Shown here: in pieces, positions 5,638 to 16,911 of the stretch | Layout: every line of letters begins with the position of its first letter | Numbering within the stretch: the stretch's first letter is position 1 | Virus record (IMG/VR): IMGVR_UViG_3300046660_000219 | Coordinates: 1 to 64,000 of that record | DNA length: 64,000 nucleotides | Direction: 5' to 3' (one strand) | Program-made: the position numbers and the translations under genes | Notes under the pieces: model-generated | Databases searched by the model: none | What the model was told of the DNA's origin: nothing | Seen by the model: only the letters and a program-made list of their open reading frames with translations

Positions 5638-6309
5638 TTACTTCATCGAACGCGCGCGCGACTTCGGCTTAGCGGCAGCCTTGGCCGGAGCCTTGGCGGC
5701 GGGCTTCGACGGCTTCGCGGCCTTCGGCGCAGGCTTGGCAGCGCGTTGCGGCTTAGCCGGCGGCGTCGGAGCCTTAGCGGGCTTCTTCGGCGCGGCCTTG
5801 GCCGGAGCCTTAGCAGCAGGCTTGCTAGCCTTTTGCGGCTTAGCCGGAGCGGCAGCAGCGGGCTTCTTCTTCAGCTTGCTCGGATCGGTCTTCGAACCGG
5901 GCGGACGGCCAAGACGCTTGATCTTACGACCGCCCTTGGTCATGCCGGTCTTAATGGCACGCTTAACGGCAAGACCAATCTTCTTATTCCAAGCAGGCGT
6001 GCGGACTTGCTTGTGCGTCTTAGCAGCCTTCTTGGCGGCGACCGAAGCAGCCATATCCTTCTTACGCAGCTTGCCGGTACCCTTATCGACGATCATACCT
6101 TTCGGCACGTTCTTGACAGGGGCCTTGTTTTGCAGGACCGGCTTAGCCTTCGGCTTACGCGCGGCGACCGGTTCGGCCTTGTGCACCGGAGCCTTCTTCA
6201 CCGGCTTACCGGGCTTGGTCGGCTTCGCCGTGGTCGCGGTCGGGGTCTTCTTGGCGGGCTTCTGCGGCTTAGCCGGAGCGGCCGCCTTCTTAACGGGCTT
6301 ACGGGCCAT
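5638..6309 (-). CDS. Histone H1-like K/A/P-rich basic protein with AT-hook-like motif
   Basis: PAKPQK/KPAAKAPAK repeats; KRLGRPPGSK. Confidence 0.8.
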   Translation of the reverse strand: MARKPVKKAAAPAKPQKPAKKTPTATTAKPTKPGKPVKKAPVHKAEPVAARKPKAKPVLQNKAPVKNVPKGMIVDKGTGKLRKKDMAASVAAKKAAKTHKQVRTPAWNKKIGLAVKRAIKTGMTKGGRKIKRLGRPPGSKTDPSKLKKKPAAAAPAKPQKASKPAAKAPAKAAPKKPAKAPTPPAKPQRAAKPAPKAAKPSKPAAKAPAKAAAKPKSRARSMK

Positions 6310-6462: not shown

Positions 6463-7836
6463 CTATCTCGTGCCTTGTCTGGGCTCGATACCCATAAACA
6501 ATTTCTGCGCCACAATCTTCTCTGCATACATGGGGAACAGCGTAGCTTCAATCTCAGACGGTCCAACCAATTTGGTCTGCGTAGATACCGATGTGACCCG
6601 AAGATCCTTGTCTGAGATGGTATCCAGATCAGTCACCCTCCACACTAAAGCATATTTGGCTTCAGCAATGATAGAGTTGTTGTCGATGATCCCGACTTCA
6701 GCAGGCAGGGTAACAGTAAGTGGGTTGGCCTTGACTACCTGATCGAGGCCAGCTTGCGCCGTATAGTTACTCACCTGACCCTTCAGCATTATATGGCGCA
6801 CAGTAAGATCAACGTGCGTAAGCTTTTGCGGCTGGTTTGAGATGTTGGTTACTTTTACCACTAAATCATCGAGCGGTGACTGTGCGAAATCTTTGAGATT
6901 AGGTGAAGGTGTACCATTGCTACCGATGGAGAAAGCAAACTGTAAGCCAGCCGCCGCGTCACGGTTGTTGCGTGCCAGGGTCCAGGCAACCGTGAAATAG
7001 CTAGGCAGTGAAGTTCGCCACGCCGCATAACCGCCCGGCTGAATAGTCCACACCGGAACCTTGGCGTTATCTTCGTCAAGGACAGCACCCTCTGCTTCAT
7101 ACGCATACTCGACCGGCAAGATACGATGCGTACCACCCCACAAAGAGTAACCACCGATGAAGCCGGTGTTTAGGCACAGCGGACAGGCGGTATGTGTCAT
7201 ACCTAAAAGGTATGCATTGTCGAGGAGCATCTGCTCCGGGTTCCAAGACTGCTCACCTTCGAAATCGGCGATTAGTTGATCGGAAAACAGACCATCCGTA
7301 TTATCCCATTCGTGGTCTAACGGGTTCTGACCTGGGCCACCCGGCGTCACACGACCGTAACCGTGCAGCGCCTCCAACGGATCAATGGTAGGCTCAACAT
7401 CACTATCTTTAGTAGCTTCGAAATGGTGAGCCGGTTCAGCGTCAGAAACCAACGGCTTTTCCCATTCGGTGTGACGATGCGCAGGCGACACGTCAACGGC
7501 GTGTACCTTAATACTGCTATAACCGTCGTTGACGCTCGGCACGTGAGGCGAGTCATCTATACTGACCACATTGGGATCGGTGTTGGGCTCATCTTCTGGT
7601 GCACCACCTCGACAAGGACACGTCTCCCCAGCGTACAGGCGTTGCCACAGAAAAAGAGTAACACCATCGATGTTGGAGATGGCTTCCTTCTGACGCCTAG
7701 CGCTGGCGGCGGCTAGGGCCGCTAACGTGTCGTTAGCATTATCACCAATACCTGTGTTGGCAGGCACAATACCGGGAGCAAGACCAACACCAGTCGGGTG
7801 TAGACTAACGCCCCCTTGTCGGGGTCCAAAGCGCAT
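6463..7836 (-). CDS. Putative virion (head-closure-like) protein
   Basis: CPC...CPLCLNTGFIGGY Zn-ribbon pattern recalled from jumbo myovirus structural proteins. Confidence 0.45.
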   Translation of the reverse strand: MRFGPRQGGVSLHPTGVGLAPGIVPANTGIGDNANDTLAALAAASARRQKEAISNIDGVTLFLWQRLYAGETCPCRGGAPEDEPNTDPNVVSIDDSPHVPSVNDGYSSIKVHAVDVSPAHRHTEWEKPLVSDAEPAHHFEATKDSDVEPTIDPLEALHGYGRVTPGGPGQNPLDHEWDNTDGLFSDQLIADFEGEQSWNPEQMLLDNAYLLGMTHTACPLCLNTGFIGGYSLWGGTHRILPVEYAYEAEGAVLDEDNAKVPVWTIQPGGYAAWRTSLPSYFTVAWTLARNNRDAAAGLQFAFSIGSNGTPSPNLKDFAQSPLDDLVVKVTNISNQPQKLTHVDLTVRHIMLKGQVSNYTAQAGLDQVVKANPLTVTLPAEVGIIDNNSIIAEAKYALVWRVTDLDTISDKDLRVTSVSTQTKLVGPSEIEATLFPMYAEKIVAQKLFMGIEPRQGTR

Positions 7837-7979
7837 GCGGCTCGTCCTTGTAAAAGGTAGTCATCAAGGGGCTGTTGCGCTAATTTGCTGATAACCGGGT
7901 CATCACGCGCGCCTGCCTACTCACAAGTAAATTAGCCCACGTGTCGAGTATGGGTATTAGAGTAAGCAGCGTCATAAGA

Positions 7980-8654
7980 ATGGAAAATCTCATGGCTAGC
8001 ACTCCTACAGTTGTATGGGAGGAAACAGTTTTAGGCCTGGACATGGGGACCAGCAATTTTGGCTGGTGCGTCATTCGTGTCAGGCTTATGACTGACGGAC
8101 GTTATCGTTTTCGCGTACTTGGTGGTGGCTTGATGGCTATGCCGCTGTCCAATCTCACGCATCAAGCTAAGGTGGAAAAAGTAACTGTCAGTCGCAAGAC
8201 CGGTAAGGCTAAAAAGACCAACGCCGGTAAGAGTGAGCCTCCGCTAGATGTGGGTGTGCATTTGTTCCTCGATGAGGTCTCCTACATATTCTCTACCTAT
8301 TATATAACGCGCGTAGTGGCAGAAAGGTTCATGTCACGGGGTAGGGGTGGAGACAGCACGATTGAGGCGATTAGCCTCATGATTGGCCTGATCCTCGCAG
8401 AGTGTAAAAAGCTATCTCTGCATTATACCGTTTTAGCGGCCGCCACGTGGAAGCTGACTTGTGCGCGGGCTGCAAATGACAAGGAAATTCTGCCTAAATT
8501 ATACGCCTATGCTAAGCGGCAATATGGTAAAGAGCCTCACGCTTTCGACGCTGCACTGATGGCGCTGTATACCGTTGTACCGACTGAGGCTATGCGCGAC
8601 GTTCTTAAAACCCAGTTCATCGATCACGTCGCTTCGCGACAAATAGAGATTTAG
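7980..8654 (+). CDS. RuvC-like Holliday junction resolvase
   Basis: VLGLDMG, VVAERF, TWK, HAFDA acidic-motif pattern. Confidence 0.75.
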   Translation: MENLMASTPTVVWEETVLGLDMGTSNFGWCVIRVRLMTDGRYRFRVLGGGLMAMPLSNLTHQAKVEKVTVSRKTGKAKKTNAGKSEPPLDVGVHLFLDEVSYIFSTYYITRVVAERFMSRGRGGDSTIEAISLMIGLILAECKKLSLHYTVLAAATWKLTCARAANDKEILPKLYAYAKRQYGKEPHAFDAALMALYTVVPTEAMRDVLKTQFIDHVASRQIEI

Positions 8655-8920: not shown

Positions 8921-9682
8921 ATGTTGATGGCTGATAATAGTACGAAAATACGCGTAGTTTGGGACGCTCGCTACAACTCCTTTGTGATGACGATTGACGG
9001 CAAAGAGCCAGAGTTTATCAGCGAGGCTACTGTTTCTGCACTAGGGCTTACGCCCGAGCAAATTCGCGAAGCAGATTCTTCCCTAAACACGCGAGACCGT
9101 CTTGCGGAAATGGGTATACCCGTCCGACCGTTAAAGTGGGAAGAGATTGCGAAAATCACGGGTGTAAGTTTAGAAGAAATGGTGGCTGAACTTACGAGTC
9201 TAAGCACCAAAGAACTCCCAACAGCGGTGCGATCTACCCCGGAGACACCCTCTCGCGGTTGTTGGATCGGCCCTCCGGCGATCGACAAACTAGACCTCGC
9301 CTGTAACCTAATCAATCGTGCGTTTGGTGAGGTCTGCTACTTGGTCGGTTCAGCCACACGTACGCGCGACTACCGCGACGTGGATGTGCGAATGATGATA
9401 CCGGATGAAAAGGTAAATCTCCTATTCGGCCCGATCCGACCTTTGGAGCACTACGCGCTGTTCAATCTGATCAACCTGTCTGTTACTATTTATCTGCGTG
9501 AACAGACAGGTCTACCGATTGACTTCCAAGTTCAATCACGTGAGCAGGCCAACAAGACCTATTCAGGCGAAGTGAAACACTCACGCCACCCGCTAGGCCT
9601 GCACTCGAAACTGTCGCGCGAACAACTCCCCGCGTGGATGACAATCGACTGGCCGGAGGACGTGGATGAGGACGACGATTAA
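8921..9682 (+). CDS. Pol-beta-superfamily nucleotidyltransferase-domain protein
   Basis: YLVGSATRTRDYRDVDV (GS..DxD) and downstream PIDFQ. Confidence 0.7.
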   Translation: MLMADNSTKIRVVWDARYNSFVMTIDGKEPEFISEATVSALGLTPEQIREADSSLNTRDRLAEMGIPVRPLKWEEIAKITGVSLEEMVAELTSLSTKELPTAVRSTPETPSRGCWIGPPAIDKLDLACNLINRAFGEVCYLVGSATRTRDYRDVDVRMMIPDEKVNLLFGPIRPLEHYALFNLINLSVTIYLREQTGLPIDFQVQSREQANKTYSGEVKHSRHPLGLHSKLSREQLPAWMTIDWPEDVDEDDD

Positions 9683-9741
9683 GTTCGTTTTTGTTTACCG
9701 TTAAATACGCCTACTATTGGGAAATCAACGGGGACGGATCA

Positions 9742-10200
9742 ATGAGATTAGCGACAACGCTGGTTCAGCAGCGTAATGATACAGATTGCGCGGTTTGCGC
9801 CGTCGCAATGGCCCTGGATTTGCCGTACGACCGGGTGATGGCAGCGGCAATGGCCGCCAAGTGCTACAGCCGGGAAAACGGTACATCAGCCGTGTACAAA
9901 GTACTGGAGAAGCTAGGGCTGTCGTATACCTTTCTCCAGGGTAAACCGATTGGTGATTTCACGACGCGCATGCGCGATTACGCGCTGTCTAACGACATAT
10001 TCCGCGACATGGTGTGGGGACGGCCGGCGATCATCACCGCCAAGTCGATCAACGGCGCATTCAGTCATGCCGTTTGGTACGACGGAGAGAAGGTGTACGA
10101 CCCCAGCGCACGTCAAGTGCATACGTCGCTGTGGACGATGGAGATCGAAGACACTATACTATTTGCACCAGGTTTTCGGAGTAGCGTAGAAAAGGTATAA
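9742..10200 (+). CDS. C39-like cysteine peptidase
   Basis: QQRNDTDCAVCAVAM...HAVWYDG..VYDP (Q, C, H, D residues). Confidence 0.7.
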   Translation: MRLATTLVQQRNDTDCAVCAVAMALDLPYDRVMAAAMAAKCYSRENGTSAVYKVLEKLGLSYTFLQGKPIGDFTTRMRDYALSNDIFRDMVWGRPAIITAKSINGAFSHAVWYDGEKVYDPSARQVHTSLWTMEIEDTILFAPGFRSSVEKV

Positions 10201-10205
10201 CTTCC

Positions 10206-10236
10206 AGGGTGTCGGCAATGCCGACACCCTTTCTTT
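10206..10236 (+). terminator. Intrinsic terminator
   Basis: AGGGTGTCGGCA-A-TGCCGACACCCT-TTCTTT. Confidence 0.85.
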
Positions 10237-10239
10237 GTG

Positions 10240-11320
10240 TCAAAATTCAGCAATGTTGCGTGTTTCGGAAGTATTTCTTGAAATATTGCCGGAAATTTCT
10301 CCGAAAACAGGCTAAACCGGAGGCCATAGAAGCATTGTAATTGTCTAGTGATCCAATGAGCTAGCCTAGTCTCCTCCTCTCCTTGGAATACACACTCCCT
10401 CCACTAATCTAGGGAGCTAGAGAGACAGCCTAATTCTTAATCACAGCCAAACAGGGTAACAGAGGCTAGACACACTAGACGCAGTCCTCTACGTCATTTT
10501 TCGGGCTCCCTACAAAAACGCCTATTTTCTACACTTTTCTTCAATTCTCCCCTCTACCCTCCCTACAGCTCAGCTTCAATACTCAAGCTTCCCATCTTTC
10601 GTACCTACCATTACGTGCTAAACGCTTTACAAACCTGAAGATTTTTCACACCTCGATTTTAGCTCCTAAAACGTACCCTAAAATCCGAACACCCTCTAAT
10701 CGCTTCTTTACGGTGCGCAGCACCTAATGCGCCAAGTCTACGCAAAGATTGGCCGTTTCTACACGTCTAAAATAAAAGGTATTTACCACTTTTACCAAGC
10801 GCCAGGTTTAGCAGACCTTTAGCTAAAATTTCCTAAAGCTCGCTAAACTTGAACGTTGCTTCTTTCTGGGGTCTAGACACGTCTAGACCCCTCCCACACG
10901 AGTAGTTCAAAATCACGTCTCTCGCTAACTTGGCACTTGGTAAAATTTGCTAAAGCACCTCCACGCTCCAAGTGCACTTACCATTGTAGCAATATTTCCG
11001 ACGATCCTGTGGATCACCCATGTCATGGCTAGATCGGGTGAGCCAGTGTCCTGTGTGACGTGACTACTCTTCAGAGCGTACGTACTGTGGACATCCTGCC
11101 TTGTCCATGGGTGTTGCCGTGGGACCTGTGGTGGTAATTTATTTTCAGGTTTGAGGGGCGTGGAGTGCGTAAAATGGTAAAGAAAACAGGACGTATTGTC
11201 CTCTGGGTGACAGGTGGTTTGGCTGTGTACGCGGTCCTGCTGTGGCTCGTCGGCATGGCGGGCTACTACTGGTTTGGACGTTGACAGTACTTGTGTGTTT
11301 GAAGTCGGGGACGAGTAGAG
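10240..11320. other. Large non-coding region, candidate replication origin or packaging site
   Basis: No credible ORF; top strand C-rich then G-rich; dyad-symmetric element 10849-10910. Confidence 0.45.
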
Positions 11321-11323
11321 ATA

Positions 11324-12196
11324 ATGGTAGGGTTTACGAAGCACGTAGAGTTGGTAGAGAGCGCCGGGGACGTGAGGCGCGTACAGGCCGTGGGGAAGCG
11401 GCGGTTTGGTCTGTTACGTCTGGTGCTCAACTACTTGCGCGCCGTGGGCTTGGTGACGGCCAAGGAAGCCAGGGGGCACTTGTCGGAGGTCAAAGCCTGG
11501 GTAGAGAAGTTCCGCCGTGCACCGGCCTTGTCAGCCTCGCTAGTGGAACTGTCTCGCATGGGTCGTAACGTCGTAACGTTGGCTGTTGATACCATTGTTG
11601 GCTTGCTGGAGACGCGGTTTACGGCCGAAGGCCTAGGGGCGTTTCCCAAGGTGGAGGTGAAGACTACCGTCATGCGTTTCTTCAGCAATCGACAGGCCTT
11701 GACGCGGCTACTTGATTGCCTGGGTGGTTCAGAAGTGCACGGGGTGGTGTATTGTCGTCGAAAAGGTAAGATGCGGGGTGTGGAAGTAGACTCCGTATTG
11801 GAGTGCTTGCGGGGCTTGGCTAGGCGTGAGGATCTTGCCTACATGCTGGACGTTGGGCCGGGCGGTGTGCACTTCCACTTCTTGTGCGCTAGAGAGGTAG
11901 CGAAAAAGGTAGAGGAACGGGTAAACAGGTTGGAGCTTGGTTTACAAGCCTCAGTGACGCCTAAAGTGGTGCGTGAGTATTGGCAAGAAGTCGCGCCTAG
12001 CAGAGACGTCCACACGTACTTGGCCTTGAAGTTGACGCCTGCCTTGCAGGGAGACGGGATTTCGCGTAGAGTGCGCCGTGAAGTAGGGACCGTGTTCCAC
12101 GACTCACGTGAGTTCGGCCGCGTCACCTGTCACCTCTCCCGTCATCGCAGTAGCTCTGAGTTAGGCGCGTCTTCGCGTCGGTCTCGTGCTGCCTAA
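11324..12196 (+). CDS. Hypothetical protein with HUH-endonuclease (Rep-like) motifs
   Basis: YMLDVGPGGVHFHFL and TYLALK. Confidence 0.45.
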   Translation: MVGFTKHVELVESAGDVRRVQAVGKRRFGLLRLVLNYLRAVGLVTAKEARGHLSEVKAWVEKFRRAPALSASLVELSRMGRNVVTLAVDTIVGLLETRFTAEGLGAFPKVEVKTTVMRFFSNRQALTRLLDCLGGSEVHGVVYCRRKGKMRGVEVDSVLECLRGLARREDLAYMLDVGPGGVHFHFLCAREVAKKVEERVNRLELGLQASVTPKVVREYWQEVAPSRDVHTYLALKLTPALQGDGISRRVRREVGTVFHDSREFGRVTCHLSRHRSSSELGASSRRSRAA

Positions 12197-16589: not shown

Positions 16590-16911
16590 TGAAACAATTA
16601 CTATTTCTTTCGCTGGCCGTAGTGCTAGTTGGTTGTGGATCAAAATCGCAGGAACCTTGAACGACGTCGTTCAAGGTGATGGCTTCACTATCCAACGTGA
16701 CTACTTGAACAATGTTGTCACGTGCAAGAGCGTGTACGGCGAAACATTCACGTTCACTGGTGCGGACGTCCGCACTGCTCACAGCGATTTTCTAGGCTCT
16801 GCCGGAGTTATTACCGTTAAGGACGATAAAGGCTTCGTCCGTAACATCCGCACCGACTCGGAAATCTGGTCGTGTGGCGGTGAAACAATAAAAGTAAAAC
16901 CACAGGAGTAA
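16531..16911 (+). CDS. Hypothetical protein (start uncertain)
   Basis: ORF track, operon packing. Confidence 0.55.
   Translation: MDVGLTAQSSNTFSATRGTDETITISFAGRSASWLWIKIAGTLNDVVQGDGFTIQRDYLNNVVTCKSVYGETFTFTGADVRTAHSDFLGSAGVITVKDDKGFVRNIRTDSEIWSCGGETIKVKPQE

What the first reader, a model, noticed from the sequence alone, without database searches (positions are those of the whole stretch)
10790..11040. Dyad-symmetric element near a C-to-G skew switch in a 1.1-kb non-coding region
Seen: GGGGTCTAGAC-AC-GTCTAGACCCC (10868-91) flanked exactly symmetrically by TTGAAC (10849) and GTTCAA (10905), each 13 nt out. There is an outer imperfect inverted repeat (TTTTACCAAGCGCCAGGTTTAGC ~10790; GCTAACTTGGCACTTGGTAAAA ~10924) and a direct repeat TAAAATTT(C/G)CTAAAGC (10824, 10941). 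The top strand is C-rich before and G-rich after about 11.0 kb. Inference: replication origin, or packaging/resolution site.
Basis: partly seen in the sequence, partly recalled or inferred. Interest (0 to 1): 0.6.

Follow-up and report, generated by a model that had tools for sequence, protein, structure and literature searches.

The report
Dyad-rich control region of jumbo phage
The largest gene-free stretch of an uncultured 206-kb soil phage holds the genome's most self-complementary DNA and its sharpest strand-composition flip; it looks like a protein-binding control site, perhaps the replication origin, but no data available here can say which.

Summary

The window is the first 64 kb of a circularly assembled 205.9-kb jumbo phage from rhizosphere metagenomes. 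The phage is only about 30% related in protein sequence to cultured jumbo phages.

The region 10201-11173 is the largest ORF-free, tRNA-free gap in the genome. It contains:
- the most negative and, next to it, the most positive local GC skew of the whole genome, with the switch at 11019;
- the lowest-GC 600-nt window;
- the best-folding 160-nt window (10788-10947) on both strands;
- clusters of two hexamers, CTAGAC (7 copies against 0.37 expected) and GCTAAA (8 against 0.42).

The central dyad is two copies of the 8-bp palindrome GTCTAGAC, one helical turn apart. A degenerate tandem copy lies 406 bp upstream.

There is no Rfam match, no credible ORF, no U-tract, no homologue anywhere, no protelomerase or recombinase, no iterons and no DnaA-box cluster. 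Whole-genome skew does not point to this place.

The best reading is a DNA-level protein-binding hub, most likely a replication origin (0.33). A transcription boundary with operator is nearly as likely (0.30). A packaging or resolution site has no support. Raw reads or wet-lab work are needed to decide.

The parts
10206..10237 (+). Intrinsic terminator of the upstream operon: a 12-bp G+C-rich stem followed by a T-run.
   Evidence: (I10)
10263..10306 (.). Imperfect dyad. It contains a 12-of-16 match to the palindrome that lies upstream of the TTGACA-type promoters elsewhere in this genome.
   Evidence: (I3, I12); read directly from the sequence
10331..10730 (.). Tract that is G-poor, C-rich and pyrimidine-rich on the top strand (GC skew -0.39). 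It includes the genome's most negative skew and its joint-lowest purine content.
10464..10481 (.). Site A: a tandem pair of CTAGAC hexamers 9 nt apart, 406 bp upstream of the central dyad. It is one of only two such pairs in the genome.
   Evidence: (D4)
10766..10865 (.). AT-rich stretch with 36% G+C, joint-lowest 100-nt window of the genome, directly left of the central dyad.
10790..10812 (.). Left arm of the outer imperfect inverted repeat.
   Evidence: (I2)
10806..10848 (.). Second dyad, axis about 10827.5. It is made of nested head-to-head GCTAAA-type hexamers around a 10-nt AT-rich centre. That centre holds the left copy of the direct repeat (10824-10839).
   Evidence: (D5)
10849..10910 (.). 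Central dyad unit: TTGAAC, 13 nt, the perfect 24-bp dyad 10868-10891, 13 nt, GTTCAA. The 24-bp dyad is two copies of the 8-bp palindrome GTCTAGAC, 10 bp apart.
   Evidence: (I19)
10924..10956 (.). Right arm of the outer inverted repeat (10924-10945), overlapping the right copy of the direct repeat (10941-10956). It includes a TGG-TAAAAT match to an extended -10 element at 10938-10946.
   Evidence: (I2, D5); the -10 match is read directly from the sequence
11007..11131 (+). Three same-strand CTGTGG copies, with a fourth at 11240. The skew switch lies at 11019. One DnaA box with a single mismatch lies at 11008-11016.
11133..11141 (+). Copy of the phage's own intergenic promoter-like motif G(C/G)TAATTTA, 32 nt before the next start codon.
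11174..11284 (+). Probable 36-aa single-helix membrane ORF with a GGAG ribosome-binding site. It is the first gene of the downstream orphan operon.
11324..12196 (+). 290-aa orphan ORF with codon usage like a real gene. It has the highest coding-strand GC skew (0.21) of all 216 ORFs of at least 100 aa.

Best explanation
The element is a DNA-level protein-binding hub in the phage's largest non-coding region, and it most likely serves as a replication origin.

What is shown:
- Two hexamer families are clustered here, CTAGAC and GCTAAA.
- They are arranged as two dyads about five helical turns apart (axes about 10827.5 and 10879.5), enclosed by a longer inverted repeat.
- The central dyad sits next to the least stable DNA of the genome.
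- The flanks on both sides are G-rich and purine-rich on the outward-reading strand.

What is inferred:
- A dimer-of-dimers or double-ring initiator binds the double palindrome.
- The AT-rich stretch at 10766-10865 melts.
- Outward transcripts form stable RNA-DNA hybrids, as at T4 oriF/oriG or ColE1. These hybrids prime synthesis or give entry to the phage's DnaB-like helicase and primase.
For: - It is the largest ORF-free, tRNA-free gap in the genome.
- It holds the extreme skew of both signs, side by side, with origin-type polarity, and the purine content flips in the same way.
- It holds the lowest-GC 600-nt window and a joint-lowest 100-nt window that abuts the dyad.
- It is the top-ranked fold on both strands. 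Nearly all pairs are Watson-Crick on either strand, which points to DNA rather than RNA.
- CTAGAC occurs 7 times against 0.37 expected and GCTAAA 8 times against 0.42. Both survive Bonferroni correction.
- Inverted-repeat content of the window is among the three highest in the genome.
- It lies 3 kb from the divergence point of the gene arms at 7837-7940.
- Replication and recombination genes are present: resolvase, clamp loader, SbcCD-like proteins, primase, a DnaB-like helicase and a RecA-like protein.
Against: - Whole-genome cumulative skew peaks near 53 kb and bottoms at 127-156 kb, not here.
- Direct-repeat content of the window is average, so there are no iterons.
- Only two weak DnaA boxes are present, 370 nt apart.
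- No initiator gene was recognised nearby. All flanking genes are orphans.
- The block is absent from the corresponding junction of a related phage.
- No leftward promoter or terminator could be identified.
- There are no RNA, terminus or coverage data.
Confidence: 0.33

Rival explanations
1. A transcription boundary and control region.

- Read-through from the upstream operon is stopped by the intrinsic terminator.
- Any remaining read-through is stopped by a long C-rich, G-poor untranslated tract that loads Rho.
- The double palindrome and site A are operators for a dimer-of-dimers repressor, possibly looping the 406 bp between them.
- This repressor controls promoters for the downstream orphan operon, which looks like a host-takeover gene block.
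For: - A strong terminator lies at 10206-10230.
- The C-over-G tract is of the kind Rho uses (the rule itself is general knowledge).
- The phage's promoter-like motif lies at 11133-11141, just before the next ORF.
- There is an extended -10-like match at 10938-10946 and a partial copy of the promoter-upstream palindrome at 10290-10306.
- Tandem 8-bp palindromes one turn apart are typical of repressor operators such as MetJ or Arc (general knowledge).
- Orphan genes on both sides and absence of the block at the related phage's corresponding junction suit an accessory regulatory block.
Against: - No regulator gene (helix-turn-helix or ribbon-helix-helix) was found among the neighbours.
- The consensus scan found no good sigma-70 promoter inside the region.
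- A 650-nt Rho tract behind an efficient intrinsic terminator would be redundant.
- This reading does not explain why the right flank and its first long gene carry the genome's most positive skew.
Confidence: 0.3
2. A structured non-coding RNA of about 160 nt (10790-10950) with a three-helix T shape, or an RNase III-type processing site within a longer transcript.
For: - The fold z-score is -7.3 on the + strand, the best in the genome.
- A near-copy of the promoter motif (GGTATTTA) lies at 10778-10785, just before the structure (read directly from the sequence).
Against: - There is no Rfam match at E up to 1.
- The - strand folds equally well, and the helices are almost all Watson-Crick on both strands.
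- There is no U-tract after any stem.
- There is no homologue, so covariation cannot be tested.
- The upstream terminator blocks read-through.
Confidence: 0.1
3. A packaging site, a genome terminus, an injection-stop site or a concatemer or telomere resolution site.
For: - It is dyad-rich non-coding DNA. Phage T5's injection-stop region and the telRL site of phage N15 are also dyad-rich (general knowledge).
- A RuvC-like resolvase gene lies 2.2 kb upstream.
Against: - No protelomerase or tyrosine recombinase was found.
- The palindrome is only 24 bp.
- The contig closes on itself with a 127-bp overlap inside a gene.
- A separate Logan assembly contig from the probable source sample (run X1) runs straight through the site.
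- The resolvase gene is present in related phages that lack this region next to it.
Confidence: 0.08
4. A remnant of a small mobile element bounded by inverted repeats (MITE-like), or repeats with no function.
For: The roughly 156-bp unit is bounded by 19-22 nt inverted repeats.
Against: - It is present once in the genome.
- No other copy was found in viral, metagenome or genome collections. All pattern hits lie in unrelated contexts and occur at about the chance rate.
- No target-site duplication is visible.
- It coincides with genome-wide extremes of composition.
Confidence: 0.04

Closest known systems
Dyad-type viral origins (polyomavirus core origin; HSV-1 oriS)
   Same: A perfect central palindrome is built from short recognition units placed head to head. 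It is flanked by easily melted AT-rich DNA and an imperfect inverted repeat. An auxiliary tandem site lies nearby, and the whole sits in non-coding DNA between transcription units.
   Different: Those origins belong to eukaryotic viruses with known initiator helicases (large T antigen, UL9). Here there is no sequence similarity, no initiator has been identified, and function is untested.
R-loop origins (T4 oriF/oriG, ColE1)
   Same: The phage has a T4-like set of replication and recombination genes. An AT-rich unwinding stretch is present. The outward strands are G-rich and purine-rich, which would stabilise RNA-DNA hybrids.
   Different: No promoter has been mapped. T4 origins have no large dyad. 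The skew here is far stronger than anything described for those origins (from memory, not tested).
Iteron and DnaA-box origins (lambda, P1, many plasmids)
   Same: A non-coding, AT-rich region with clustered short motifs.
   Different: Direct-repeat content is average. Only two weak DnaA boxes are present. There is no adjacent rep gene.
Operators of dimer-of-dimers repressors (MetJ met boxes, Arc/Mnt)
   Same: Tandem 8-bp palindromes lie about one helical turn apart. Tandem met boxes even spell GTCTAGAC across their junction.
   Different: The spacing is 10 bp rather than 8. No cognate regulator gene was found. The motif is not enriched in bacterial genomes.
Protelomerase telRL sites and poxvirus concatemer junctions
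   Same: A central palindrome with symmetric flanking repeats, and a RuvC-like resolvase gene nearby.
   Different: There is no protelomerase. The palindrome is much shorter, and the assembly is circular.

Membership tests
Iteron/DnaA-box replication origin | Three or more direct repeats (iterons) of about 17-22 bp | tested here: not met
   Direct 7-9-mer repeat content of the 1-kb window is average (61 against a mean of 52.5, sd 27). TRF finds nothing.
Iteron/DnaA-box replication origin | A cluster of DnaA boxes | tested here: not met
   One relaxed box at 10642 and one single-mismatch box at 11008. This is not more than chance.
Iteron/DnaA-box replication origin | An adjacent initiator (rep) gene | tested here: not met
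   The neighbours have no Pfam or PHROG replication-initiator hit and are orphans.
Origin of replication (any type) | An AT-rich unwinding element next to the binding sites | tested here: met
   10766-10865 has 36% G+C, joint-lowest in the genome. The lowest 600-nt window is 10230-10829.
Origin of replication (any type) | The genome-wide cumulative GC skew turns at the site | tested here: not met
   The maximum is near 53 kb and the minimum at 127-156 kb. Only a local switch occurs at 11019.
Origin of replication (any type) | Autonomous or infection-dependent replication of the cloned fragment; a coverage or nascent-strand peak | not testable with these tools
   Only Logan contigs were available and no raw reads.
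R-loop origin (T4 oriF/G type) | A promoter directing transcription into an unwinding element | tested here: inconclusive
   Only motif-level candidates exist (10938-10946 and 11133-11141). No RNA runs hold this phage.
Intrinsic terminator | A G+C-rich hairpin followed by a U-tract | tested here: not met
   The central dyad has no T-run on either strand. The true terminator is at 10206-10237.
Known RNA family (Rfam 15) | A covariance-model match | tested here: not met
   No match at E up to 1 across 9500-12000. No tRNA in the window.
Protelomerase or recombinase resolution site | A cognate enzyme encoded in the genome | tested here: not met
   PF16684 and PF00589 are absent from the genome.
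ParB/KorB centromere-like site | A ParB-family protein encoded in the genome | tested here: not met
   PF02195 is absent. The resemblance of the half-site TTTAGC to the KorB operator is recalled from memory only.
Repressor operator | The palindrome overlaps a promoter, and a cognate regulator gene is present | tested here: inconclusive
   TTGAAC lies 17 nt before TCTAGA on both strands, a poor match to promoter consensus (read directly from the sequence; no site in the consensus scan). No regulator domain was found nearby.
MITE / mobile element | Multiple copies and a target-site duplication | tested here: not met
   It is single-copy. No related copies exist in any collection.

The most novel reading that the evidence does not exclude
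A jumbo phage uses a dyad-type, bidirectional origin.

- A double palindrome of four CTAGAC units recruits a still unknown phage initiator next to the genome's weakest duplex.
- Sequence-encoded G-rich and purine-rich flanks stabilise outward R-loops that prime both forks.

This would combine the polyomavirus/herpesvirus origin layout with T4/ColE1-type priming. I know of no described example of this in a tailed phage.
Probability: 0.2. Interest if true: 0.65.

Novelty: new member of a known kind. Interest (0 to 1): 0.4.

Why it matters
As far as I know, origins of replication and early control regions of jumbo phages are almost entirely unmapped. This locus gives a sharply defined, testable candidate. 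It is a roughly 170-bp nest of dyads with two specific hexamer motifs, set between the two most skewed stretches of the genome.

If it is an origin, it would show how a large lytic phage starts replication, and it would provide a motif with which to fish for the initiator. If it is an operator and insulator, it marks the switch for a block of orphan genes that look like host-takeover genes.

Either way it is a single uncultured genome with no relatives carrying the element, so for now the wider impact is modest.

Tried and rejected
- **Homology of the region:** blastn against phages and plasmids found nothing.
- **Flanking proteins:** both are orphans among 5.8 billion proteins and in IMG/VR. 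The ESM Atlas gave nothing for the 290-aa protein.
- **Pattern scans for the double palindrome:**
  - Viral contigs gave 1 hit, upstream of a P2 gpA-like gene in an unrelated AT-rich contig.
  - Metagenome contigs gave 4 hits, 3 of them distinct, all in unrelated contexts.
  - Genome contigs gave 8 hits in unrelated taxa, about the chance expectation.
- **Relatives by portal protein:**
  - The closest have 68% and 54% identity but sit on contigs of only 3-4 kb.
  - A group at 41-46% identity was walked. The resolvase junction is conserved there but inverted, and it lacks this block.
  - The 205,604-bp relative could not be searched as a whole.
  - The cultured relatives Peetri and RHEph12 show no comparable gap in the stretches I inspected.
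- **Reads:** only two DNA runs hold the phage, both kept as contigs. No termini, depth profile, variants or RNA could be obtained.
- **Gene searches:** the terminase could not be located with three Pfam models. ParB, PolB, protelomerase and integrase are all absent.
- **Other checks:**
  - The sigma-70 consensus scan found nothing inside the region.
  - The second GTCTAGAC locus at 108747 is a chance hit beside a tRNA cluster.
  - Two folding scans timed out before a coarser one succeeded.
- **Readings rejected:** intrinsic terminator, known RNA family, MITE, telomere-resolution site and iteron origin.

Full report
**Source of the window.** The window is bases 1-64000 of a 205,908-bp IMG/VR virus record.
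- The two ends of the record share an exact 127-bp overlap, and base 1 falls inside an SbcC-like gene. The start is therefore an assembly artefact and not a physical end.
- PHROG hits include a portal protein, a clamp loader, SbcCD-like nuclease subunits, a primase, a large SNF2-type helicase, an NAD-dependent ligase and a RuvC-like resolvase. A DnaB-like and a RecA-like gene lie elsewhere in the genome. Together these identify a tailed jumbo phage.
- The nearest cultured relatives share only about 30% protein identity. They include Rhizobium phage RHEph12, Pseudomonas phages PaBG and Peetri, and Erwinia and Dickeya jumbo phages.
- The phage is abundant in one rhizosphere metagenome (k-mer depth about 326). 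It is present, with identical sequence, at low depth in a second rhizosphere study.

**Check of the observation.** All the listed features are present at the stated coordinates.
- The perfect 11+2+11 dyad is at 10868-10891.
- TTGAAC and GTTCAA lie exactly 13 nt out on either side and share the dyad's axis (10879.5).
- The outer imperfect inverted repeat is 10790-10812 with 10924-10945. Its axis is 12 nt to the left, so it is not concentric with the dyad.
- The 16-nt direct repeat is at 10824 and 10941.
- Two details add to the description. GTCTAGAC is itself an 8-bp palindrome, so the dyad is two copies of it spaced 10 bp apart, one helical turn. The stretch 10806-10848 forms a second dyad (axis about 10827.5, roughly five helical turns from the first) made of head-to-head GCTAAA-type hexamers around an AT-rich centre.

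**How unusual the locus is.**
- 10201-10924 is the longest stretch of the genome without any ORF of at least 75 aa. The only comparable gap, at 107.9-108.5 kb, holds three of the four tRNA genes found at 107.1-108.5 kb.
- No ORF of 20 aa or more inside the region looks real. The 139-aa reverse-strand ORF scores as non-coding by codon usage.
- The most negative 300-nt GC skew in the genome is -0.48 at 10505. The most positive is +0.45 at 11109. They lie side by side (genome sd 0.076), with the switch at 11019.
- Purine content flips in the same way.
- The lowest-GC 600-nt window (10230-10829) and a joint-lowest 100-nt window (10766-10865) are both here.
- In a composition-corrected folding scan of 2572 windows, 10788-10947 ranks first on both strands. 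The caveat is that the window grid was set to frame the element.
- Hexamer enrichment against the rest of the genome puts GCTAAA/TTTAGC first (8 against 0.42, P 1.7e-8) and CTAGAC/GTCTAG second (7 against 0.37, P 1.3e-7). Both survive correction for 2076 tests.
- The only two tandem CTAGAC pairs in the genome are the central dyad and a degenerate copy at 10464-10481, 406 bp upstream.
- Inverted-repeat content is among the three highest in the genome, while direct-repeat content is average.
- The dyad on its own is not unique. The genome has 36 perfect inverted repeats with arms of 10 or more, most of them terminator-like. This one lacks a T-run on either strand.

**Surroundings.**
- A strong intrinsic terminator at 10206-10237 ends the upstream operon.
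- An intergenic motif, G(C/G)TAATTTA, occurs 21 times in the genome, always on the sense strand. Where it lies close to a gene it sits about 25-35 nt before the start codon. It is also present in a related phage, so it is probably a phage promoter.
- One copy of that motif, at 11133-11141, precedes a 36-aa membrane ORF and then a run of orphan genes.
- The two arms of gene orientation diverge at 7837-7940, 3 kb to the left of the dyad.
- The genes flanking the region have no homologue among 5.8 billion proteins.
- In a related phage (portal identity 41%), the resolvase and 457-aa gene pair is conserved but inverted. It is followed directly by homologues of genes that lie at 29.5 kb in this phage. 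The block that holds the element therefore does not lie at the corresponding junction there; the rest of that genome was not examined.

**What the element is not.**
- It has no Rfam match and is not a tRNA.
- It has no terminator tail.
- It has no iterons and no DnaA-box cluster.
- The genome encodes no protelomerase, tyrosine recombinase or ParB.
- There is no second copy in the genome and no relative in any collection. All pattern hits are unrelated palindromes at about the chance rate.

**Interpretation.**
- Nearly all predicted pairs are Watson-Crick on both strands, and both strands fold equally well. Two short motifs are clustered in symmetric arrays. I therefore read the element as double-stranded DNA bound by proteins, not as an RNA gene.
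- *Origin reading.* The extreme outward G-rich and purine-rich flanks, the AT-rich stretch beside the dyad, and the position near the arm divergence and the replication genes make a replication origin the single most likely function (0.33). I picture a layout like dyad-type viral origins, with R-loop help as in T4 oriF/oriG or ColE1. The rule that purine-rich RNA forms especially stable hybrids is general knowledge and was not computed here.
- *Against that reading.* The genome-wide skew does not turn here, no initiator was found, and the block is lineage-specific.
- *Main rival.* A transcription boundary is almost as likely (0.30). It would consist of the intrinsic terminator, a Rho-loading C-rich tract, an operator pair and a promoter for the orphan operon.
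- *Other readings.* A structured RNA (0.10), a packaging, terminus or resolution site (0.08) and a mobile remnant (0.04) are less likely. About 0.15 remains for functions I have not thought of.

**Limits.**
- There are no raw reads, no RNA data and no relatives carrying the element, so nothing here is a functional test.
- The dyad sequence rests on one sample, assembled twice with identical results. The second study's contigs do not cover 10364-11151.

Noticed in passing
whole genome; window copies at 7880(+), 7935(-), 11135, 17723, 22706, 28104, 28438, 46928, 49442, 51227: The motif G(C/G)TAATTTA occurs 21 times, always on the sense strand of the local genes and mostly in intergenic DNA. Copies close to a gene lie about 25-35 nt before the start codon. 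A related phage (L015, positions 4450 and 5020) also has it. It is probably a phage-specific promoter, perhaps late, analogous to T4's TATAAATA. Two copies face away from each other at the arm divergence point, 7837-7940.
   Followed up: partly
G000 146252, 166069, 173620, 188531 (- strand); partial copy at 202444: A second conserved promoter-like class has an AATTTTTCCGAC-type element, then TTGACA, 15 nt, then TnTACAAGGGTG. At 173621-173648 the upstream element is a perfect palindrome with 13-bp arms. A 12-of-16 match to it lies at 10290-10306 in the focal region.
   Followed up: partly
window 16654-16677: A perfect 24-bp palindrome lies inside a lipoprotein-like ORF that starts at 16590. It contains TTGAAC and GTTCAA 6 nt apart, the same hexamer pair that flanks the central dyad.
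   Followed up: no
window 5638-6309 (- strand): This window is rich in direct repeats because the reverse-strand ORF appears to encode a low-complexity Ala/Lys/Pro repeat protein (histone H1-like), judged from the repeat DNA and not translated. A similar Ala/Lys-rich C-terminal tail, read by eye, ends the 184-aa gene before a 658-nt gap in the related phage L015.
   Followed up: partly
window 11324-12196: This 290-aa orphan ORF has the highest coding-strand GC skew (0.21, about 3.6 sd above the mean) of all 216 ORFs of at least 100 aa. Its codon usage is gene-like. The ESM Atlas model has low confidence (pLDDT 0.46).
   Followed up: partly
G000 107.1-108.5 kb (L003 3120-4497): Four tRNA genes lie on the - strand: Leu-TAG, Met-CAT, Leu-TAA and Arg-TCT. 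Three of them lie in the second-largest ORF-free gap of the genome.
   Followed up: yes
L015 201-2895 compared with window 6463-8654: The divergent pair formed by the RuvC-like resolvase and the 457-aa protein is conserved in a related phage but inverted relative to the rest of the genome. Window genes from 8.6 to 29.5 kb are missing from that junction.
   Followed up: partly
L004 1985-2012: An unrelated AT-rich IMG/VR contig has a similar double GTCTAGAC palindrome in the intergenic DNA about 260 nt upstream of the listed start of a P2 gpA-like rolling-circle replication gene. This is probably coincidence but was not examined further.
   Followed up: no
G000 92537-92570: A perfect hairpin with 14-bp arms, with A-runs and T-runs on both sides, lies where the + and - gene arms converge. 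It looks like a bidirectional terminator.
   Followed up: no
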